Shown here piece after piece: positions 3,798 to 26,889 of a stretch of 64,000 bases of DNA. The notes beneath the pieces were generated by a model, which saw nothing but the letters and a program-made list of their open reading frames with translations, searched no databases and was not told the origin of the DNA. The stretch lies in the NCBI GenBank assembly GCA_001179505.1, contig CDMY01000295.1, forward strand, positions 124,001 to 188,000, given 5' to 3'. Positions within the stretch are counted from its first letter, which is position 1; each line of letters opens with the position of its first letter. The stretch comes from Vitrella brassicaformis CCMP3155. Taxonomy: Eukaryota > Protista > Chromerida. The translations under genes were made by a program, and so were the position numbers.

Positions 3798-5730
3798 ATG
3801 AGTGTAGCTCCCATCGTGGGCGAAGGCTCATCGCAGCCGCCGTCCCTGCCATCCATCGACGAACACGCCATAGACAACTCGGAGGCAGATGTCACGCCCG
3901 CAGCCATCAAGACCGACATCAAAGTGGCCCTGAACGGCCTGCCCGAGGCGACCAACGGATCTCTAGCAGAGCCAATGGACGCAGCCCGTCATGGGAGAGA
4001 GAGGGAGTTGCTTGATGGTGTGAAAGAGGAGGAGAGGGGTGAGGGGAAGATGATGAACGGGCTGGGGTTTGGCGCATCGTCGTCGGCCGCTGGTGCACCG
4101 GCGACGCGGATGAAAGACTCGCACATTGACAAGGTACGGTACGCCCATGAGGGGGGAGGTTGCCTGAGTGCGTTCTGTTTTTTCACTGTATCTGTCATGG
4201 CTGGCTGGTGGTTGTGTTGTGACGTGCAGGGTTTGGGTGAGCCGATTATCGTTGCGCGGCACATTTCCAAGTCATACGCCATCGTCGGCCGGGACGAGAG
4301 TGTCACAGCACTCAAGAACATCAGGTAGACAGACTGGGGAGACCAAACCAACGCACACACACACAGACACAGGGCGCGGCGCGTGCATGTGTATGTGTGC
4401 TTCTGTGTGTCCAGCTTGAGCACGGCGCCTGACTGTCCGTTTCCTCCCATCCGTCGCGGCGAGTTTGTGATGATCCGGGGGCCTTCGGGCGGCGGCAAGA
4501 CGACTTTGCTCAACATACTCGGCACCATCGACCACCCGACTACCGGTGCGTTGCTGACACATATGGCGCGAACACATGGATTCATCCCTCGTCCTCTGTG
4601 TGTGTGCAGGTGAGGTTGAGATCTGCAACCGTTTGATCAGTCGGCATTCGACGGACGTGGAGCTGTCGCGGCTGCGGCTGTCCACCATCGGCTTCGTCTT
4701 CCAGACGTTCAACCTGCTGGCCACCCTATCGGCCTTCGAGAATGTGGTCATGCCCCTGAGGGACACGCACGCGCGCAGGGGGGTGTCAATTCACCTGATG
4801 TGTGTGTGTCCGTGTGTGTGGTTGAATGACTCAGGAGCTGCCGATGATTCTGCTGGGAAAGCTCAACAAGAAGCAGCGGCTGCAGAGGGCCACAGGTCAG
4901 TGATGGACCACCACGGCATTGTCACCGTCTGTCCGTCTGTGCGTCTGTCCAGATTTGCTCAAGAAAGTGGGTCTGCAGGACCGGCTGGAGCACCTCCCCA
5001 GCGAACTATCCGGCGGCGAAATGCAGCGGACGGCCATCGCCAGGTACACAGATGGGTGGGTCAGCCACACGACTCACTCATGCAGACAGTCAACAGAGGT
5101 GATTATCTTGTCAATTTCGCTGCGTTTCAGGGCGCTTGCAAACGAGCCGCAGCTGCTGCTGCTCGATGAACCAACAGGTACACATATGGTGAATCAACAG
5201 ACAGACAGACAGACAGATGAACAGGTGACTGTGTCCGTCTGGGTCACTGCAGGGGACTTGGACACCCGCAACACGATAGAGGTGATGGATCTGCTGCTGG
5301 ACATCAACCAGAGGGGCTTCACACACACAGACGAGGAGGACGACCACACCGAGGGCACCAGCGAGTCGACCGGCGGCATCAACAACCAGGAAGAGACGTA
5401 CGGCACCACCTGTGTCATGGTACAGCTACATGGACACTATCGACTTAGTGTCTCATGTCGGCGGGTGTTTTGACTGTGGTCAGGTGACGCACAATCCTGA
5501 TTTGGAGTGCTATGCCGACAGGATTCTGTACGTCAGGGATGGCATCTTCGAGAAACAGGTGCCAAGGCAGAGAGGCGGGCGGGCATTCTGAGCGTGTGAT
5601 GCTTGTGCACATGGGCGGATGGGTATGCTCCGTGTGTTTGTTGTTTGTGCAGGCGATCAATCCCGTGCAGCGGCGGTTGAAGCTGGAACCCTACCTGAAA
5701 TACCTCAACAGAGCCACACACCAGAGCTGA
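3798..5730 (+). CDS. Stand-alone ABC ATP-binding protein, LolD/MacB-type nucleotide-binding domain, 9 exons
   Basis: Walker [10 protein letters not shown]-loop [10 protein letters not shown], signature LSGGEMQR, Walker B/D-loop [12 protein letters not shown]-loop VTHN. All eight GT-AG introns are phase-consistent. No transmembrane domain. Start codon uncertain (3798 or later). Confidence 0.92.
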
Positions 5731-6071
5731 CAGAGAACGGATGGATGGATGGCGCAGCTCGTGCCTGCGCTGGCGCGTGTCGATGTATATACGAATTGTG
5801 TGTGAGTCGCTGGTGTCGATCGATCCGTTTTTGAGCCCCTGGGAGCCACTGACTGACTGACTGCACATATCTGTGTGTTGCGTGTGAGCCAGCCAGTGTT
5901 CCTGCTATGTGTGTGTAATAGACAGTCTGTCAGCAAACTGTCCCTGTGTGTGTGGCGTTTATGGACTGACTAAGTCTAGTGGTGCAACTTCTCATTCCCC
6001 TGGGCGTGTGAATCGGTCGATTACTCGAACGGCCAGACAAACAGCAAGCGTCGGTCAGGCTCATGCATCCA

Positions 6072-6103
<32 letters not shown>

Positions 6104-6281
6104 GTACCGTTGGTTCCTCCCACCGTATTGCTAGAGCACCAACACAACATCATTCACGCGTGTCACTGAAGCATCCACCCACCAGCCATACATACATACA
6201 TACATAGCACATCTGATGCCGTCTGGTCTTGTCGGCTAGTGCCCTCCCTCCTTCCCGCCCGCCCTTCCATCCCTCCCTGAG

Positions 6282-8184
6282 TTATTCGATGCCCAGTGGA
6301 ATGAACAGCCCCGTCCTCGACAGGCGCCCCAGCTGACCCCACCCAAACTGGCAGTCCTGGTCGCCGAGGTGCTCGTTGAAGCCCTTCTGCACGCCCGTCA
6401 GCTGATACTTGGCCACCTCGTCGAGCCGGGCCTTGTGCACCACCTCACGCACACCCGTCATCTTGTTGACCACCTGCCCCCCACTGCCGGCGGCACGAAT
6501 GGCGAAGCACTTGAGGGGCGGGACGGTCACCTTGACGCGCTTGTCGCCCTGCTGCTCGTATCTCGTCCCGCCCACCACCTCTCTGTTGCTGCTCGTCTGT
6601 GTGGCCGCCGACTTGACGAAGTGGTTGACAGCCGCACGAACGCGGCGCCTCAGCTGCGAGTCGCCGATGAGGTACTCGTCGATGGCCGCGGAAGCAGCCG
6701 ATGGCTCGTGCAGGAAGGCCCCGATCTTCCATGCGATGCCCTCGGCCTCGTGAGGTCCGAATGCCATGTTGGATGGGGAGGGGTGGGGGTGGGCGCCGTC
6801 GTGGTGGGGGGCGAGGGGCAGCAGACGGCCGAGACGCATCGAGTGGTCGCGCTGGGGACGAAGAGCGTCGTTGATGGCCGACATGGTGGCATTGGGCAGC
6901 TCGTTGAGCACCGTGGTATACTCAGTCAGCACCAGCTGGCGCTTCCGGCGGTCGGCCTCGGTGGCAATCGGCATGCGGGTGATGTCTGCGCCGGTCCGCA
7001 GCAGCGTCCGGATGGTGGCCTTGATATTGGGAATGATGCTCGATTGAAGCATCTCTTGGTATTGTCGGTCGAGTTGTTCGTCGTGCAGATCCTCATGCAT
7101 GTGGACGTCCCCCTCCAACCTGTCGACTCGATCGGCAGCTGTGGCGAGAGCTGTCCTGTTGGGGATCACGCCGGATGTGGGTGTGTCGATCTCGTTAGGC
7201 GGGAGGCGACGGCAGAGATAGTCAGCCGAGCAAGGCGAGCCCATGGACGCCGCGTCGTGCAGTGGCGTCCATTCGATGTTGCGAGTGGCCGTGATGCTCG
7301 CCCCGTTCTCGACGACAAGGTCCAGGTAAGCGTCGATGAAGCCTTGAGAGACGTATCCTCTCTCGTTCCTGGCTGCGTGGTGCACCAGGTTGCCGCCCAT
7401 AGCCTGTTCCACCTCAGTCGCCAGAGTGCTGTCCTGCTGAATGAGGCGCCGATACATGGCCAGCAGGGCGTGCTCGTAGTCGGAGGGAGCGCTTCTGCCA
7501 AACGAGTCTGAGTGAGGCAGCTCCATCACCATGACCCCGTGAACGTTGGCCTGATGCTGCATCAGCAGGTTAAATGCCGCCTCGCTGCCAGCCGCGATCG
7601 CCACACGGATGGGCATCGTGGGCTGGTGATGATGCGGGCGTCCCTGATTGACATCTGCACCTCCATTAAGTAGTGCGGTCATGATGTCACGCTCGAGCTG
7701 CGGCGACGACCACTGCGGAAGGACAAGTGGACGGTTGAGAAGGAATCCGCTGCTCTCGTCCCACACCCCATCGTTCTGAAAGCAGGCCCAGACGGATCCC
7801 CAGACGGATGGGATGCAGCCGCCGCTCTTGTTGTCGATAGCGAGGGCAAGCAGCGGATAGTGCGAGAGTTGTTCGAATTGGTATTCGAGGGCGTCCGTGC
7901 GCAGGTGCAATGCGACTGAGGCATCGGCGTCTGCTCCTTGTCGCTGGAGCCGCTGCGTCACCTCGTCGGCACTAATGACAGTGCGGCAGATGATGGCCTC
8001 CGCCAGCTGTCGGCTGACATCACTGTATTCGAGCTCGTCATCGAACTCAATGTTCACGCCGCCGAGTTCCGTCCAGTCAATTCCTGCCGATATGACAACC
8101 ACCCAACAGCATGACGTTTGCCATCCCCTTCCCTCTTCGTGCATGCCTCCCTCTCTGCTCATCTATCTCACCTGATTGCGTCAT
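6282..8184 (-). CDS. Ankyrin-repeat protein of a lineage-expanded family with conserved C-terminal domain (copy 1, intact)
   Basis: Micro-exon ATG ACG CAA TCA G (8184-8172), intron 8171-8084, then a long open exon. Ankyrin motifs LLNGGADVN, NLVHHAA, WTPLHDAASMGS, LLRTGADI. Family C-terminus HHDGAHPHPSPSNMAFGPHEAE...GVQKGFNEHLG. Confidence 0.85.
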
Positions 8185-8193
8185 CTCCTTCTC

Positions 8194-8433
8194 TCAGGCC
8201 CTGTCGGGGTCGAATCGTCTGATGTCGGTCATGATGCCGGCGTCATACTGGCAGTCGAGGTACTTGACGTTGTAGAAGGTGGCCGAGAGGACCGCCAGCC
8301 GGTCCATCTCGCGGATCTCCTTGATGGCCGCCTGCAGGAACCGGAGCCGCTTCTGCCACTGCTTGGTGCTCTCCCACTCGCTACGCTGACCCAACGTCGA
8401 AAACACCTGGGCCTCAAAACTTGTGGATGTCAT
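8194..8433 (-). CDS. XRN2-binding domain (XTBD) small protein, CDKN2AIPNL/PAXT-1-like, 79 aa
   Basis: QRSEWESTKQWQKRLRFL...MDRLAVLSATFYNVKYLDCQYDAGIM matches the recalled XTBD pattern R..ES..W..R..F...D.L..LS....N...L.C.Y...M. Confidence 0.75.
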   Translation of the reverse strand: MTSTSFEAQVFSTLGQRSEWESTKQWQKRLRFLQAAIKEIREMDRLAVLSATFYNVKYLDCQYDAGIMTDIRRFDPDRA

Positions 8434-8537
8434 TTAGACGAAGGTGGGGGACACTTATGGGCGTCACTCCCTTCTCTCGTCTCTTCGCCATCTTTGCGAG
8501 CTCGGAGCCCAAGACCCAGAGAGAGGGCAGCGCAAAA

Positions 8538-9441
8538 ATGGCGTCTGGGGCCGCCAGCTCGGCCAACAGCTCGTCTGGGGATCCTCTCGACCCCTGCCGT
8601 CCGCAGGATCTTGTCGCTCTTTCGTCCAGCGCCACGCACGACGCCATGACCGTGTCTGAGTCTCTGGGGGAGGACCTGCAGCCGACGGAGCTCAAGGCAG
8701 CTCAGCCCGCTCTGCTGACGCGGAAACAGGGTGATGAATGCGACTTTGCAGTGAGCAGGGGCGGGAGACGGCTGGTCTCGGCAGGGGCAGCTGTCAGTCG
8801 CTTTTGGTTGTCTTGTCATGCCCTTCAGCTTTGTCTGGAGGACGGCTGTCCCGAGAAGAAATGCGACATTCCCCCGCTGCCAGACAAGGGGCTTGTAAGG
8901 CGATGCACGCCCCATCAGATGGATTAATGTGCATATTCCATTGGCTCGTTCTGAATGTCAGGCCGGCCGTGTGCTTCGTTGGCTTGAACGTCGTCCTGCA
9001 CTGCAGAAGTGGCAGATGGACACCCAGGGCCACCAGCTGGAGACCAATCTGTACATCGCACAACTCGAAAAGCGCATCCAGGTGGGCTCTGGGTGAGGGA
9101 GACGCCACTCCCCTTGTCGTCTTGCGCGTGAGGTTCTCCCTCCCTGACAGGCCCAGGACCATGATCTCGCCGCCAATCAGGGAGAGATTGACCGCCTGAA
9201 GGGGCTGCTGGAGAGCCCTCCCCCTTTGTCCGTGTCTGGCGATTCACTCGACGACGCCAGCAGTGCGGGCCGCTCCACACGCGCCAGCCATGGCAACAAC
9301 AGTGACACCCACAAGAATGCTGACGATGAGGATGAAAATGAGCAGGGCGGCGGTTCGCTGTGGTCGGGTATGCAGATGTGGACGACGGAGGATGTGGGCA
9401 TGCTGGCAATGACATTCATGGGAAAGCGCAACAAGAAATGA
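8538..9441 (+). CDS. Hypothetical protein with short coiled coil, 4 exons
   Basis: In-phase exons MASGAASS...DECDFA | LCLEDG...DKGL | AGRVLRWLERRPALQKW...EKRIQ | AQDHDLAANQGEIDRLKGLL...KRNKK*. Canonical splice sites. Confidence 0.65.
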
Positions 9442-12804: not shown

Positions 12805-14853
12805 ATGGGTGGTGTGTTGGGGGGGCTGTGCAGGAGGAGAGCTCGCCTGTGCTTGGGTAACGACTGGTGCAGACAGACTCATCAGAGAGCGGACAGCATG
12901 CTGTTGAATGTCCTCTGTGTCTGCTCGCGTGTCTGGTGCAGGTCCCACTGTCGACGAAGAAGAGGTCGGCGAGCCTCACAACCGCCCGTTGGGCGTGGAA
13001 GACCTCGATTTGTTCAAGGTCAACGAGAAAGTCCTCGCTGGCTTCATCCGACGCAGCGATGCGACGACCCATGGTCCGACCAAACGGCTTGCGAAAGGAA
13101 TCGCCCACCGCAGCTTCACTTATGCAGATCAAGTGAAGACGCTCATTCAGCAAGGGGCGGATCCTAACGCTGCACCCATACTCTGGGCTAAGGACAGCCG
13201 AGGCAAGCCATACTTGCACCGTATCAAGGACGACTCCTCCCCCCTTCTCAGCTTAGCCGTCGATAACTATACGCACTGCGGCATGAGCCATCACGCGACA
13301 TCTTTTCTCCGGCCTGACTGCGAAGTCGGCATAGTTTTCGACGTCGTTCTGCCCAATTGGTCGTCTGCCGAGCTGCAGCGAGACATCCTGCACGCGCTGC
13401 TCGATGGGGGGGCAGACATTAATCGCGGGGACTATACTAACGGACCAGCGACAGTAATGGAGAACAAGGCTATTCGGGTCGCAGTTCGTGGTGGCAACGT
13501 GACGGCTGTCGGAGCCCTCTTGGCACGCAACAGCGACCTGCACGGTTCTATTCATGACCACGTCATAGACCTCGCGTGCCTCTATGTTGTCCCGCCGCGT
13601 CCCCAGCAGTACGAGAATGCCCTGCTGACCATCTACAGACTACTCCTCCAACACGACCCAACCATCGCAACCCATACACCACCGCACGTGCCTGTGATAG
13701 GTACCTGCATGTTTGTGTCCTCGGCATGTGCGTCACTTTTGTACTTCTTGAGATCCAGCCGCAGCGGAGACAGACGATCGCCCAGCCTTTCGCCATCTGA
13801 GCTGGAGCCCCTGTCCGCCCTCACCTTGTGCATCGCGCAGCCGACTGGGGTCATTTCTACTCGCAAGCCTTTCTGGAACAGTATCTAGACCTTATCAGGG
13901 AGAGCGGTGTGAACTTGATGGCCATGGACAGCCAGCAGCAAACCCCGTTGCACACGGCGGCATTTCATGCCTCTTTCCACGTCGCTGACTACCTGTGCCG
14001 GCATTCGACTGTCGACGACATCAACAGAGGGACGCCAAAGGATTCCACCAACACGCCGCTCGCTTGCGCTGCGAGAGAGCTAGACATGCCCTCGTGCGCT
14101 TACAGAGCGCTTACTACCGTGCGTGTGCTGCTGCGCGGTGGGGCAGCGCCGTCCCTTACTCGCATGTCCACGGCTACCCACGAGCATCGCCGTCGCCAGC
14201 TGCTGGTGGTGGACGAGTACAAATCAGTGCTCAACGAGCTGCCCGATGTGGTCATAACGGCGATCAACGCCGCCCTCGCCCCCCATCGCGACCACTCGAT
14301 GCTCCTTGCCCGCCTGCTGCCCCTCGCCCCGCATCATGACGGCGCCCACCCCCACCCCTCCCCATCCAACATGGCATTCGGACCACACGAGGCCGAGGGC
14401 ATCGCATGGAAGGTCGGGGCCTTCCTGCACGAGCCATCGGCTGCTTCCGCGGCCATCGACGAATACCTCATCGGCGACTCGCAGCTGAGGCGCCGCGTCA
14501 AGGCGGCTGTCGGCCACTTCGTCAAGTCGGCGGCCACACGGACGAGCAGCAACAGAGAGGTGGTAGGCGGGACGAGATATGAGCAGCAGGGCGACAAGCG
14601 CGTCAAGGTGACCGTGCCGCCGCTGTAGTGCTTCGCCGTCAGAGGGCCCCGTGGTGGGCGGCCCCGCCTGGTGGGTGTGCGTGAGGCGGTGCATAGGGCT
14701 CGAATGGACGAGGTGGCAAAGTATCAGCTGACGGGCGTCCAGAAGGGCTTCAACGAGCACCTCGGCGGCGATGATTGCCTCTTTGGTGAGTGGCAGCAGC
14801 TGGGATACATCGATAGACAGACGAATCTGTTCGTCCCGCTGGGCATCGAGTAG
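12805..14853 (+). pseudogene. Ankyrin-repeat family copy 2 with premature TAG at 14626-14628; truncated or pseudogenised
   Basis: Exon 1 MGGVLGGLCRRRARLCLG, then ankyrin motifs LLDGGADIN and TPLHTAA. VPPL-TAG-CFAVR corresponds to VPPLKCFAIR and VPPLQCFAIR in the paralogues, and homology continues in frame to 14853. A frame change at about 13700-13810 needs a weak GAG acceptor. Confidence 0.7.
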
Positions 14854-25002: not shown

Positions 25003-26889
25003 TCACAAGTCGTCTCCATCCATCGCACCGCCATCGTCTTCTCCCTCGCCGTCGCCATCGTCGCCGTCCCGCTCGTCGGCCCCGTCATCACCGCCCCCCT
25101 CCGATGCGTCGCCGTCGTCCTCCTCAGGCTCCGTCAGCAACAGCTGGAACACGCCATCCTTGTCGATGTACCCGAGCTGCTGCCAATCGAACTGGCAATC
25201 CTGGTCGCCGAGATGCTCGTTGAAGCCCTTCTGCACGCCCGTCAGCTGATACTTGGCCACCTCGTCGAGCCGGGCCTTGTGCACCACCTCACGCAAACCG
25301 ACCACCTGCCCTTCACTGCCGGCGGCACGGATGGCGAAGCACTGGAGAGGCGGCACGGTCACCTTGACGCGCTTGTCGCCCTGCTGTTCGTATCTCGTCC
25401 CGCCCACCACCTCCCTGTTGCTGCTCGTCTGTGTGGCCGCCGACTTGACGAAATGGCCGACGGCCGCCTTGACGCGACGTCTCAGCTGGGTGTCGCCGAT
25501 GAGGTACTGGTCGATGGCCGCGGGGGCAGCCGATGGCTCGTGCAGGAAGGCGCCGATCTTCCATGCGATGGCCTCTGCCTCGTGTGGTCCGAATGCCATG
25601 TTGGATGGGGAGGGGTGGGGGTGGGCGCCGTCGTGATGGGGGGCGAGGGGCAGCAGACGGGAGAGAAGCAGTGGTCGCGCTGGGGGGCGAGGGCGCCGTT
25701 GATGGCCGACATGGTGGCATTGGGCAGCTCGTTGAGCACCGTGGTGTACTCGGCCAGCACGAGATTCCGCTGACGGCGGTCCTCCTCAGTGGCCGTGGGC
25801 AAGCAGGTGATGTCTGCCCCAGCCCGCAGCAGCACCATAGTGGTGCGCTTCTGCCATTCGGCTATCCTTGTTGGGGGTGTGGCGGGATCCGGGAGCCACG
25901 AGGCAGCGCTTTGGAAGGGAGGAGGGAGATGCCTTCTTGACCTGTTGATGTCCGCAGCTGAGAGGCGGCGACACAGGGACTCGGCCACACAGGGGGAGAT
26001 GTGGGAGGCCGCCGCAGCGAGAGGGGTGTGTTGGTCAAAATCCTCCCCCCGGACGTCCGCCCCGTAGGCCACCACCTGAAACGTAGTCACAGACAACAGC
26101 AGCTGAAGATGGACGTCAGTGAGTCCGACTGTATCTGCGCTGACCAGATCCACATAGCTGTCCATGAAGTCCTGGGAGAAGATACGCCCCTATAGCCGGC
26201 ATGGTGCAGCACGTTGCGACCGTCGTCGTCGGTTTCGTTGGCGAATATCCTGAGCCGCTCATAGATGGCGAGCAGCTTCTGCTCGTAGTCACGCGAGGGC
26301 CGTACAAAAGCGTGCTCAGTCACCATCACTGGCAGCATCAGCACCATTGCCCCGTCGATCTCCTCGCCGATCTCCTCGCCGCGCTCGAGCAGCAGGTCGA
26401 CGGCAGCTTCGTTGCCGGCGGCAATGGCCACTCTGAGAGGCCTTCTTTTGTCCTGCATGTACCCCTCCGGGGCATTGATGTCTGCCCCACCATCGATGAG
26501 GGCGGTGATGATGTCGCTCTCCAGCTGAAGAGATGACCACAGCGGCAGGGCGACGGGGCACGTCTCATCGTCCGCCATCCAGATGGACGGCATTGTGTAG
26601 CCACTCGCATTGTCGATGGAATACGACAGCAAGGGATAGCCGCACCGGCCCGTCCCCTTTCGCAGTAGTGGTTCGACATCCGGGTCAGCACCCTGCTGCT
26701 CGATGAGATCCGTCACCTCCTGGGCGCTGGTGAAGGTGCGGTTGATGATGCCCCGCGACAGCCGTCTGCTGGCGCGCTGGTCCCTTGTCGGAATCGAATG
26801 CCAACATCGGTCTGCCCCAGCCAGCCATCAGGGAGGTCGCCATCGGATGATGATGATGCTGCAGCCGCCGCCGATGAGGATGCAGCCAT
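25003..26889 (-). pseudogene. Ankyrin-repeat family copy 3; three frameshifts
   Basis: ATG 26889 is out of frame with RRLSRGIINRTF (shift at about 26775). A second shift lies between YRG and FSQDFMDS (about 26182). A 4-nt deletion relative to the paralogues follows RDH (about 25665). Ends in an acidic tail. Confidence 0.85.

What the first reader, a model, noticed from the sequence alone, without database searches (positions are those of the whole stretch)
6282..8433. XTBD ORF sits in frame, 9 nt upstream of an ankyrin gene: dicistronic mRNA, read-through fusion or gene capture
The minus strand reads ...GAC AGG GCC TGA GAG AAG GAG ATG ACG CAA TCA G|GTGAG. The XTBD stop (8196-8194) is followed by three sense codons and then the ankyrin ATG (8184) in the same frame. 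Nine nucleotides cannot hold a polyA signal and a promoter, and the opposite-strand gene starts about 105 bp upstream of the XTBD ATG, so both ORFs probably share one transcript. Possible outcomes are reinitiation, UGA read-through or Sec recoding giving an XTBD-ankyrin fusion that could tether an ankyrin protein to the XRN2 exonuclease, or an ankyrin copy inserted into the XTBD 3' UTR. XTBD binding to XRN2 is established for PAXT-1, CDKN2AIP, CDKN2AIPNL and NKRF; the rest is inference.
Basis: partly seen in the sequence, partly recalled or inferred. Interest (0 to 1): 0.75.

Follow-up and report, generated by a model that had tools for sequence, protein, structure and literature searches.

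The report
Two-gene messenger RNA in Vitrella
In the alga Vitrella a tiny gene for an XRN2-nuclease-binding protein and a much larger ankyrin-repeat gene sit 9 bases apart, and a duplicate copy of the pair is demonstrably carried on one spliced messenger RNA, so this is most likely a genuine two-gene (dicistronic) mRNA, a rare arrangement in eukaryotes, and not a fusion protein or an assembly error.

Summary
On the minus strand a 79-aa XTBD ORF (8433-8194; Pfam E 6e-12) ends in TGA. Nine bases later comes an in-frame ATG (8184), which an 88-nt GT-AG intron joins to a 600-codon ankyrin-repeat ORF ending at 6282.

- **Paralogue:** the same contig carries a second copy (B) 72 kb away. Homology runs exactly from the XTBD ATG to the ankyrin stop. 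The TGA, the 25-nt stretch from the TGA to the splice donor, and both splice sites are kept.
- **Transcripts:** three JGI transcript contigs show B as one spliced mRNA carrying both ORFs. No transcript across the junction of the window copy (A) was found.
- **XTBD:** its nearest relatives (Plasmodium, Cardiosporidium, unnamed contigs) are stand-alone proteins of 76-204 aa, and the closest one ends at the same place. So the TGA is an ancestral stop.
- **Ankyrin ORF:** it belongs to a Vitrella-only family of at least 76 copies. A and B are sisters nested inside that family, which points to one capture followed by a duplication.
- **Selection:** both ORFs are under purifying selection.
- **Read-through or Sec:** no SECIS and no read-through context was found.
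- **Second locus:** kish plus a Med4-like ORF also gives spliced dicistronic transcripts.

An earlier first-reader note of this scan (s1-221858) had flagged copy B. How ORF2 is translated remains open.

The parts
8194..8433 (-). ORF1: 79-aa stand-alone XTBD (XRN2-binding domain) protein, including its TGA stop (8196-8194). This exact product is not in the public protein collection that was queried.
   Evidence: PF11952 scores 45.6 bits, E 6e-12. It aligns to PAXT-1 (5fir_B) over residues 15-73, including the C-x-Y tyrosine. It is 97.5% identical in DNA to paralogue B, with dS 0.06 and dN 0.016. The exact sequence is not in the protein collection, whereas B's is (CEM00255.1).
8185..8193 (-). 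9-nt inter-ORF spacer, GAG AAG GAG, in frame and without a stop
   Evidence: Sequence. The 25 nt from the TGA to the donor have the same length in paralogue B but are only 64% identical.
8172..8184 (-). First coding exon part of ORF2: ATG ACG CAA TCA G (MTQS + first base of Gly)
   Evidence: It matches the N-terminus of public model P0001. The ATG is absent at this position in paralogue B, which has its ATG 3 nt after the acceptor.
8084..8171 (-). 88-nt GT-AG intron, phase 1, between the ORF2 start codon and the body of ORF2
   Evidence: The boundaries GTGAG...GGCAG are read. The homologous 71-nt intron of paralogue B is removed in transcript contigs L016, L017 and L018. Intron identity between A and B is 57%, with indels. 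Seven other family members checked have no intron in the CDS.
6282..8083 (-). ORF2 body: ankyrin-repeat protein with a family-specific C-terminal domain of unknown fold (599 codons + TAA)
   Evidence: Pfam Ank scores 22.5 bits against a cut-off of 21.1. The AlphaFold model has pLDDT 89.3 and matches ankyrin-repeat structures at Z 16-17 over model residues about 15-400. Against paralogue B, dN/dS is 0.53 and all indels are in frame. The 3' part of contig L018 is 100% identical to this ORF, so it is transcribed.
7984..8083 (-). Possible RNA hairpin at the 5' end of ORF2 (weak in this copy)
   Evidence: Copy A folds at z -1.65. The homologous stretch of B folds at z -3.7, with 0 of 200 shuffles as stable. 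The inner stem is the same, and one double change (C-G to A-U) lies in the outer stem. Family and ORF background values range from z -1.5 to +1.1. Only two sequences are available.

Best explanation
The locus is a conserved dicistronic nuclear gene of Vitrella brassicaformis. One spliced mRNA carries first a complete, stand-alone 79-aa XRN2-binding (XTBD) protein that ends at a genuine TGA. After 9 nt it carries a separate ankyrin-repeat protein that starts at its own ATG.

**Origin (inferred).** A copy of a large Vitrella-specific ankyrin family became joined behind the XTBD mini-gene. The composite unit was then duplicated on the same contig, giving copies A (this window) and B.

**Translation (inferred).** ORF1 is read by ordinary scanning. 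ORF2 is reached by ribosomes that start anew at its own ATG. The most likely route is termination-reinitiation over the very short spacer, because ORF1 has an A at -3 and two or three internal ATGs, which makes simple leaky scanning inefficient.

**Shown here.** The anatomy, the XTBD and ankyrin identities, conservation of the arrangement across an old duplication, selection on both ORFs, and a spliced two-ORF transcript of copy B.

**Not shown.** The transcript of copy A across the junction, and how, or how much, ORF2 is translated.
For: 1. Anatomy and frames were verified.
2. The XTBD hit is above the Pfam cut-off and aligns to PAXT-1, including the conserved tyrosine. XRN-family genes are present in the genome.
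3. Paralogue B lies at C295:57972-60146. Homology starts 2-3 nt before the XTBD ATG and ends at the ankyrin stop, and the flanks are at random level. The TGA, the 25-nt TGA-to-donor stretch, the donor and the acceptor are all kept.
4. JGI contigs L016, L017 and L018 run 5'UTR, XTBD, TGA, 24 nt, ATG, ankyrin ORF, with the 71-nt intron removed. L017 is 100% identical to B over 1141 nt of exon 2.
5. The nearest XTBD relatives among 1.84 billion representatives are mini-proteins of 76-204 aa. The single exception is one 1384-aa animal protein. The closest relative, at 58% identity, ends two residues past the Vitrella C-terminus. Their contigs show no same-strand ORF directly behind the XTBD gene.
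6. For ORF2, A against B gives dS 0.36 and dN/dS 0.53. All seven alignment gaps are multiples of 3, and there are no stops in about 600 codons in either copy.
7. Each copy keeps an ATG at the head of ORF2, but at a different place. In A it is 9 nt after the stop, in exon 1. In B it is 24 nt after the stop in the mRNA, in exon 2.
8. An independent locus, kish plus a Med4-like ORF with a 66-nt spacer, also gives spliced dicistronic transcript contigs in the same two samples.
Against: - No transcript contig spanning the junction of copy A was found. For A, co-transcription rests on homology, on public model P0001 and on a chimeric contig.
- Reinitiation after an 80-codon ORF is usually inefficient.
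- The green-alga signature of leaky scanning, depletion of ATGs upstream of ORF2, is absent. Two or three internal ATGs are seen against about three expected.
- Short-read transcript assemblies cannot exclude additional shorter transcripts that start inside ORF1 or the intron.
- There is no protein-level evidence for either product.
Confidence: 0.55

Rival explanations
1. Two overlapping transcription units. The long transcript serves only XTBD. The ankyrin protein is made mainly from a shorter mRNA whose start lies inside the XTBD ORF or the intron. In unspliced copy A, the ATG at 8162 would open a 626-aa ORF.
For: The ankyrin frame stays open through the 3' part of the intron back to ATG 8162. 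The public annotation of B lists XTBD and the ankyrin protein as separate proteins. Assemblies from short reads cannot see transcript starts.
Against: All three recovered contigs that reach the 5' end of the ankyrin ORF continue upstream through the spliced junction into XTBD and its 5'UTR. The intron of B holds several ATGs that would burden an intron-initiated mRNA. Only coding sequence is conserved between A and B, and no conserved promoter-like block lies in the intron, which is 57% identical.
Confidence: 0.2
2. Programmed UGA read-through (or Sec insertion) makes an XTBD-linker-ankyrin fusion that tethers the ankyrin protein to XRN2, alongside the free XTBD protein.
For: In the spliced mRNA of both copies ORF2 is in the ORF1 frame, with a single TGA and no other stop between them. 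The kish/Med4-like mRNA has the same property: a TGA stop, a 66-nt open spacer and an in-frame ORF2. Another member of the ankyrin family (P0025) is truly fused to RRM domains, so this family does enter fusions with RNA-related modules.
Against: - The stop context is UGA-G, not a known leaky context (my own knowledge of read-through contexts).
- No SECIS or other Rfam match was found in 5000-9000 at E up to 10.
- The closest XTBD relative ends at the same position.
- The spacer evolves about as fast as the intron, 64% against 57% identity.
- Both copies keep their own ATG.
- The frame agreement is one inherited event with a one-in-three prior.
- A kish-Med4 fusion would join a small membrane protein to a nuclear Mediator subunit, so there the shared frame is probably chance.
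Confidence: 0.1
3. The ankyrin ORF is an untranslated passenger in the long 3'UTR of the XTBD mRNA, a family copy that landed there and is decaying.
For: The family has at least 76 copies, including fragments and copies with stops. dN/dS of 0.53 is fairly relaxed.
Against: Both copies keep about 600 codons open at dS 0.36. All indels are in frame. Synonymous changes exceed non-synonymous ones per site (123 of 431 synonymous sites against 230 of 1351 non-synonymous sites). Homology ends exactly at the stop codon.
Confidence: 0.05
4. Artefact: the TGA is a sequencing or assembly error, and the true gene is one XTBD-ankyrin ORF.
For: None beyond the shared frame.
Against: The TGA is present in both genomic copies and in three independent transcript contigs of B. 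Relatives end there too.
Confidence: 0.02

Closest known systems
Nucleus-encoded bicistronic genes of green algae (Chlamydomonas, Auxenochlorella; PMC11291117)
   Same: The mRNA is mature and spliced and carries two unrelated ORFs. ORF1 is small (240 nt here, against medians of 291-357 nt). The inter-ORF distance is very short (9 and 24 nt here; the median is 40 nt in Auxenochlorella). ORF2 is of ordinary size.
   Different: The lineage is different (a chromerid alveolate). ATGs upstream of ORF2 are not depleted, and the ORF1 start has an A at -3, so the leaky-scanning signature reported for the algae is not seen. An intron sits between or just after the ORF2 start. The unit is duplicated.
XTBD proteins: PAXT-1 (C. 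elegans), CDKN2AIPNL (human), Tan1 (Tetrahymena), and the small XTBD proteins of Plasmodium
   Same: It carries a PF11952 domain above the cut-off and the conserved C-x-Y tyrosine aligned to PAXT-1. It is a minimal protein that consists only of the domain, like the 94-aa Plasmodium ovale protein (review PMC10511037).
   Different: No binding to XRN2 was tested. It is the first cistron of a two-ORF mRNA. No same-strand ORF directly follows the XTBD gene in the three relatives' contigs examined.
Termination-reinitiation on viral and cellular mRNAs (reviewed in PMC10275272, cited in PMC11291117)
   Same: The stop and the restart codons lie only 9-24 nt apart, which is the geometry that favours reinitiation (quotes this relation).
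   Different: No 18S-complementary (TURBS-like) motif was looked for or shown. ORF1 is longer than the uORFs that usually allow cellular reinitiation. The mechanism is inferred only.
Programmed stop-codon read-through extensions
   Same: There is a single in-frame UGA between two open frames.
   Different: There is no known read-through context, no SECIS and no extended homologues, and an independent ATG is retained.

Membership tests
XTBD (PF11952) XRN2-binding proteins | Profile match above Pfam's gathering score | tested here: met
   45.6 bits against a cut-off of 27.6, E 6e-12, profile positions 4-60 of 85. A six-frame search finds exactly two such ORFs in the genome, A and B.
XTBD (PF11952) XRN2-binding proteins | The highly conserved tyrosine needed for XRN2 binding (review PMC10511037) | tested here: met
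   Y63 in the motif D-C-Q-Y aligns with the G-C-E-Y tyrosine of PAXT-1 chain 5fir_B. All five small relatives retrieved also have C-x-Y. That this is the critical tyrosine is inferred from its being the conserved one; the figure itself is not held.
XTBD (PF11952) XRN2-binding proteins | An XRN2 partner in the same organism, and physical binding to it | not testable with these tools
   XRN_N (PF03159) genes occur at three or more loci. Binding needs co-immunoprecipitation or pull-down.
Ankyrin-repeat proteins | Ankyrin repeats by profile and by fold | tested here: met
   Ank (PF00023) scores 22.5 bits against 21.1, while Ank_2 is below its cut-off. Most paralogues carry clear Ank families. The model (pLDDT 89.3) matches DARPin, EHMT1, Notch and AnkB repeats at Z 16-17 with 215-250 residues aligned.
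Eukaryotic nuclear bicistronic mRNA | Both ORFs on one mature, spliced transcript | tested here: inconclusive
   Met for paralogue B (L016, L017 and L018). Not shown for the window copy, where no junction-spanning contig was found.
Eukaryotic nuclear bicistronic mRNA | Both ORFs encode functional proteins (under selection or translated) | tested here: met
   For selection only. XTBD has dN 0.016 and dS 0.061. The ankyrin ORF has dN/dS 0.53, in-frame indels and intact frames in both copies. Translation itself is not testable here.
Green-alga type leaky-scanning bicistron | Weak ORF1 start context and depletion of ATGs upstream of ORF2 | tested here: not met
   The ORF1 ATG has an A at -3. There are three (A) or two (B) internal ATGs plus two upstream ATGs in B's 5'UTR, against an expected count of about three in 240 nt (criteria from PMC11291117).
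Programmed read-through / selenoprotein recoding | In-frame open extension after the stop | tested here: met
   TGA, then three (A) or eight (B) sense codons, then the ORF2 ATG, all in frame.
Programmed read-through / selenoprotein recoding | SECIS element or a known read-through signal; homologues extended past the stop | tested here: not met
   No SECIS family matched at E up to 10 in 5000-9000. The context is UGA-G. The nearest relatives are stand-alone proteins and the closest ends at the same place.

The most novel reading that the evidence does not exclude
Vitrella, a close free-living relative of the apicomplexan parasites, may routinely express pairs of unrelated proteins from mature dicistronic mRNAs: a small ORF1, a spacer of 9-66 nt closed by UGA, and ORF2 in the same frame. 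This may use a mechanism unlike the leaky scanning of green algae. Candidates are efficient termination-reinitiation or regulated UGA read-through. In the read-through case the XTBD unit would also yield a minor XTBD-ankyrin fusion that brings a fast-evolving, lineage-specific ankyrin adaptor to the XRN2 exonuclease.
Probability: 0.12. Interest if true: 0.8.

Novelty: new member of a known kind. Interest (0 to 1): 0.5.

Why it matters
Mature two-gene mRNAs were long thought to be nearly absent from eukaryotic nuclei. They are now known to be common in green algae and some fungi. The 25 papers that hold both 'Vitrella' and 'polycistronic' concern organelles as far as the 15 listed show, so nuclear dicistrons seem undescribed in chromerids.

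Two independent loci here, XTBD-ankyrin (present twice) and kish/Med4-like, have spliced two-ORF transcripts. That suggests the capacity exists in the sister lineage of Apicomplexa. It affects gene annotation: the XTBD ORF of this locus is missing from the public protein collection that was queried. It also offers a compact natural test case for how ribosomes reach a second ORF only 9-24 nt after a stop codon.

Both XTBD genes of this genome sit in this arrangement, so production of the XRN2 cofactor and of an ankyrin protein is transcriptionally coupled. That coupling may or may not reflect a shared function.

Tried and rejected
- **Transcript of copy A.** Exact look-ups of the A products (79 aa, 626 aa, and P0001 at 604 aa) and of the A-like MMETSP ORF P0080 found no contig. 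Two pattern scans of metagenome contigs for A's XTBD end found nothing, apart from one chance bacterial hit, L019. A word search with A's N-terminal 200 aa found no fragments.
- **Sec recoding.** The Rfam scan shows no SECIS.
- **XTBD truncated by a missed intron.** The profile match stops at position 60 of 85. However, there is no GT donor between the domain and the TGA, the PAXT-1 crystal construct is 78 aa, and the closest relative ends at the same place. Rejected.
- **Alternative donor inside XTBD giving an in-frame fusion with the same acceptor.** Only codons 5, 15 and 17 have the required xGT, which would delete the domain (read). Rejected.
- **Ankyrin family as a transposon.** Nucleotide homology between copies ends within about 3-40 nt (occasionally up to about 190 nt) of the ORF end, and no shared terminal repeats were seen. 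Rejected.
- **XTBD remnants upstream of other family copies.** None in the ten next-closest loci.
- **Fold of the ORF2 C-terminal domain (about 400-604).** No convincing match by Foldseek, VIA-align on the whole model, or the ESM Atlas. A separate domain model was not made.
- **Weak RF-1/GGQ Pfam hit in the C-terminal domain (E 0.09).** The GGQ is not kept in paralogue B. Treated as chance.
- **Med4 family search.** A six-frame search of the genome found nothing. The spliced ORF gives only a sub-threshold hit.
Full report
**1. Observation**

On the minus strand the window reads as follows:
- an ATG at 8433 and a 79-codon ORF;
- TGA at 8196-8194;
- GAG AAG GAG;
- ATG at 8184 in the same frame;
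- ACG CAA TCA G;
- a GTGAG donor at 8171;
- an acceptor CAG|GA at 8084|8083, giving an 88-nt phase-1 intron;
- an ORF that stays open to TAA at 6284-6282.

ORF1 is a real XTBD. PF11952 scores 45.6 bits against a cut-off of 27.6, E 6e-12. It aligns with the crystallised XTBD of PAXT-1 (5fir_B) over residues 15-73, including the C-x-Y tyrosine. The review PMC10511037 describes a highly conserved tyrosine as required for XRN2 binding.

ORF2 is an ankyrin-repeat protein, though only marginally by Pfam (Ank 22.5 bits against 21.1). An AlphaFold model built on 64 paralogues has pLDDT 89.3. It matches ankyrin-repeat structures at Z 16-17 over residues about 15-400. The C-terminal 200 residues have no recognised fold.

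The genome has 72.7 Mb in 1064 contigs, and the window is C295:124001-188000.

**2. A second copy tests the arrangement**

A six-frame search finds only two XTBD ORFs in the genome: this one (A) and one 72 kb away on the same contig (B, C295:57972-60146).
- Alignment of the two loci shows homology that begins 2-3 nt before the XTBD ATG and ends at the ankyrin stop codon. Both flanks are at random level, 34-43%.
- Identity by segment: XTBD 97.5%; the 25 nt from the TGA to the donor 64%, with no indel; intron 57%, with indels; ankyrin ORF 70-85%, with all seven gaps multiples of three.
- The TGA, the donor TCAG|GTGAG and the acceptor CAG|GAAT are kept.
- So the TGA is not an assembly error, and the composite unit has been maintained since an old duplication.
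- Ankyrin: dS 0.36, dN 0.19, dN/dS 0.53. XTBD: dS only 0.06, dN 0.016.
- The six-fold lower dS of XTBD most simply reflects gene conversion of that roughly 250-bp segment. This is an inference.

**3. Direct transcript evidence (copy B)**

The exact XTBD protein of B is in public databases (CEM00255.1, A0A0G4EQI9). Its 90% cluster holds MMETSP ORFs and three JGI products. The JGI contigs are L016 (2451 nt, sample 3300017148) and L017 and L018 (sample 3300017297).
- They read 5'UTR, XTBD, TGA, 24 nt, ATG, ankyrin ORF, with the 71-nt intron precisely removed.
- L017 is 100% identical to B's exon 2 over 1141 nt and 99.7% identical over exon 1.
- Hence a mature spliced mRNA carries both ORFs.
- L018 switches to 100% identity with copy A in its 3' part. 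L016 becomes mosaic near its 3' end. These are assembly chimeras within a multi-copy family, but they show that A's ankyrin ORF is transcribed.
- The MMETSP ORF P0080 shares A's residues at positions 43 and 78.
- I found no contig across A's own junction. For A, co-transcription is inferred from homology and from model P0001.

Searches used single exons by reference or the database's own protein P0001. In two local scripts I concatenated A's two exons, only to align them with the transcript contigs and to list ATGs. The read-through product was never submitted; its pieces were searched apart.

**4. Is the TGA a true stop?**

A full HMMER search of 1.84 billion representatives gives only seven hits at E up to 0.001. 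Apart from the query's own cluster and one 1384-aa Branchiostoma protein, they are mini-proteins:
- two unnamed Logan contig products of 101 and 118 aa;
- a 76-aa product;
- a 204-aa protein of Cardiosporidium;
- 94-aa XTBD proteins of Plasmodium ovale.

The closest hit (58% identity) ends ...SRLDPDCN, two residues beyond the position where the Vitrella protein ends (...RRFDPDRA). In three relatives' contigs no same-strand ORF follows directly. A stand-alone XTBD ending here is therefore ancestral.

No SECIS or any credible RNA family is found in 5000-9000. The base after the stop is G in both copies, which is not a known leaky context (my own knowledge).

**5. Origin**
- The ankyrin ORF belongs to a family with at least 76 genomic matches and 76 annotated proteins. 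The only hit beyond the family is a weak generic ankyrin match.
- In a quick maximum-likelihood tree of 68 members, A and B are sisters (SH-aLRT 100) nested within the family. The careful tree search did not finish.
- Seven other members checked are single-exon genes.
- The ten next-closest loci have no XTBD remnant upstream.
- Flanks of family copies are not conserved, so the family does not look like a transposon.
- The simplest history is that one family copy became joined behind the XTBD mini-gene and the unit then duplicated.
- Another member, P0025, is a true in-frame fusion with RRM domains.

**6. How ORF2 is translated (inferred)**

Each copy keeps an ATG at the head of ORF2, but at different positions. 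A has ATG where B has GGA. B has ATG three bases after the acceptor, where A has ATT. That fits a need for independent initiation and is unnecessary for a read-through fusion.

Leaky scanning in the manner of green algae is not favoured. The ORF1 ATG has an A at -3, and there are two or three internal ATGs, about the number expected, so ATGs are not depleted (criteria in PMC11291117).

The 9-nt and 24-nt stop-to-start distances fit termination-reinitiation. However, an 80-codon ORF1 is long for that. A shorter transcript with an internal start cannot be excluded.

The first 100 nt of B's ORF2 fold unusually stably (z -3.7, 0 of 200 shuffles). A's homologous stretch shares the inner stem and has one compensatory change in the outer stem, but is not significant (z -1.65). 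I list this as a lead only.

**7. A second, independent dicistron**

Following an earlier first-reader note (s1-201882), I located the kish gene (PF06842, 61 bits; C98:75714-75929).
- JGI contigs L026 and L027, from the same two samples, carry the 71-aa kish ORF, a 66-nt spacer and a 439-aa ORF. That ORF is Med4-like at sub-threshold level: 23.2 bits against a cut-off of 26.9.
- L026 was aligned to the genome. It is 100% identical apart from one terminal block at 98.7%, with at least five introns removed from ORF2.
- Here too the stop is TGA, the spacer is open and ORF2 is in the ORF1 frame.
- The joint chance of this at two loci is roughly 0.04 by my estimate. That is too weak to argue for read-through, particularly as a fusion of a small membrane protein with a Mediator subunit makes little biological sense.
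- It does show that Vitrella produces mature dicistronic mRNAs at more than one locus.

**8. Comparison and verdict**

The closest known kind is the nucleus-encoded bicistronic gene of green algae: small ORF1, short spacer and one spliced mRNA. This case differs in lineage, in lacking the leaky-scanning signature, and in having an intron at the ORF2 start.

ORF1 passes the testable XTBD criteria. XRN2 binding is untested. The 15 listed of the 25 papers holding both 'Vitrella' and 'polycistronic' deal with organelles. An earlier first-reader note of this scan (s1-221858) had flagged copy B with the same idea; no follow-up was shown.

I rate this a new member of a known kind. The dicistronic reading is well supported for the unit and inferred for copy A. 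Capture is supported as the origin. Read-through or Sec recoding is unsupported but not excluded.

Noticed in passing
G000:C98:75714-77300 (L023:1474-3026); transcripts L026, L027: A second dicistronic spliced mRNA. It carries a 71-aa kish/DUF1242 ORF, a 66-nt spacer and a 439-aa Med4-like ORF (sub-threshold Pfam hit). ORF2 is in the ORF1 frame, and a single TGA separates them.
   Followed up: partly
G000:C295:57972-60146 (L003, L005): Paralogue B of the whole XTBD-ankyrin unit. Its XTBD part is 97.5% identical to A while the rest is 57-85% identical, which suggests gene conversion confined to the XTBD segment.
   Followed up: yes
L016:346-445 and window 7984-8083 (-): An extended RNA hairpin begins just after the ORF2 start. 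It is very stable in B (z -3.7) and weak in A (z -1.65). The inner stem is shared, and the outer stem carries one compensatory pair change.
   Followed up: partly
P0025; probably G000:C488:134936-136588, where the open frame is 976 aa: Another member of the ankyrin family is annotated as an in-frame fusion behind RRM domains (PF00076, PF11835).
   Followed up: partly
window 13819-14850 (+) and 25144-25677 (-): C-terminal fragments of the same ankyrin family lie inside the window, at 78-87% amino-acid identity. One has a TAG inside. They are probably pseudogenes or partial copies.
   Followed up: no
window 6532-6285 (-), C-terminal domain of ORF2: The family-specific C-terminal domain (residues about 400-604: long helices plus a small sheet) has no recognisable fold match. 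A weak RF-1/GGQ-like hit (E 0.09) is not conserved in paralogue B.
   Followed up: partly
window 6072-6103 and 6187-6206: (TG)n and (ATGT)n microsatellites lie in the 3' flank just downstream of the ankyrin stop codon.
   Followed up: no
window 8538-8750 (+): A divergent plus-strand ORF (starting MASGAASS...) begins 104 nt from the XTBD ATG and probably ends at a GTGAGC donor. Pfam finds no match. If it is a real gene, the two share a short bidirectional promoter region.
   Followed up: partly
window 8172-8196 (-): The XTBD stop lies only 22 nt upstream of the exon-exon junction. That is about where an exon-junction complex would sit, and it is inside the distance that normally spares an mRNA from junction-dependent decay (my own knowledge; not tested).
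   Followed up: no
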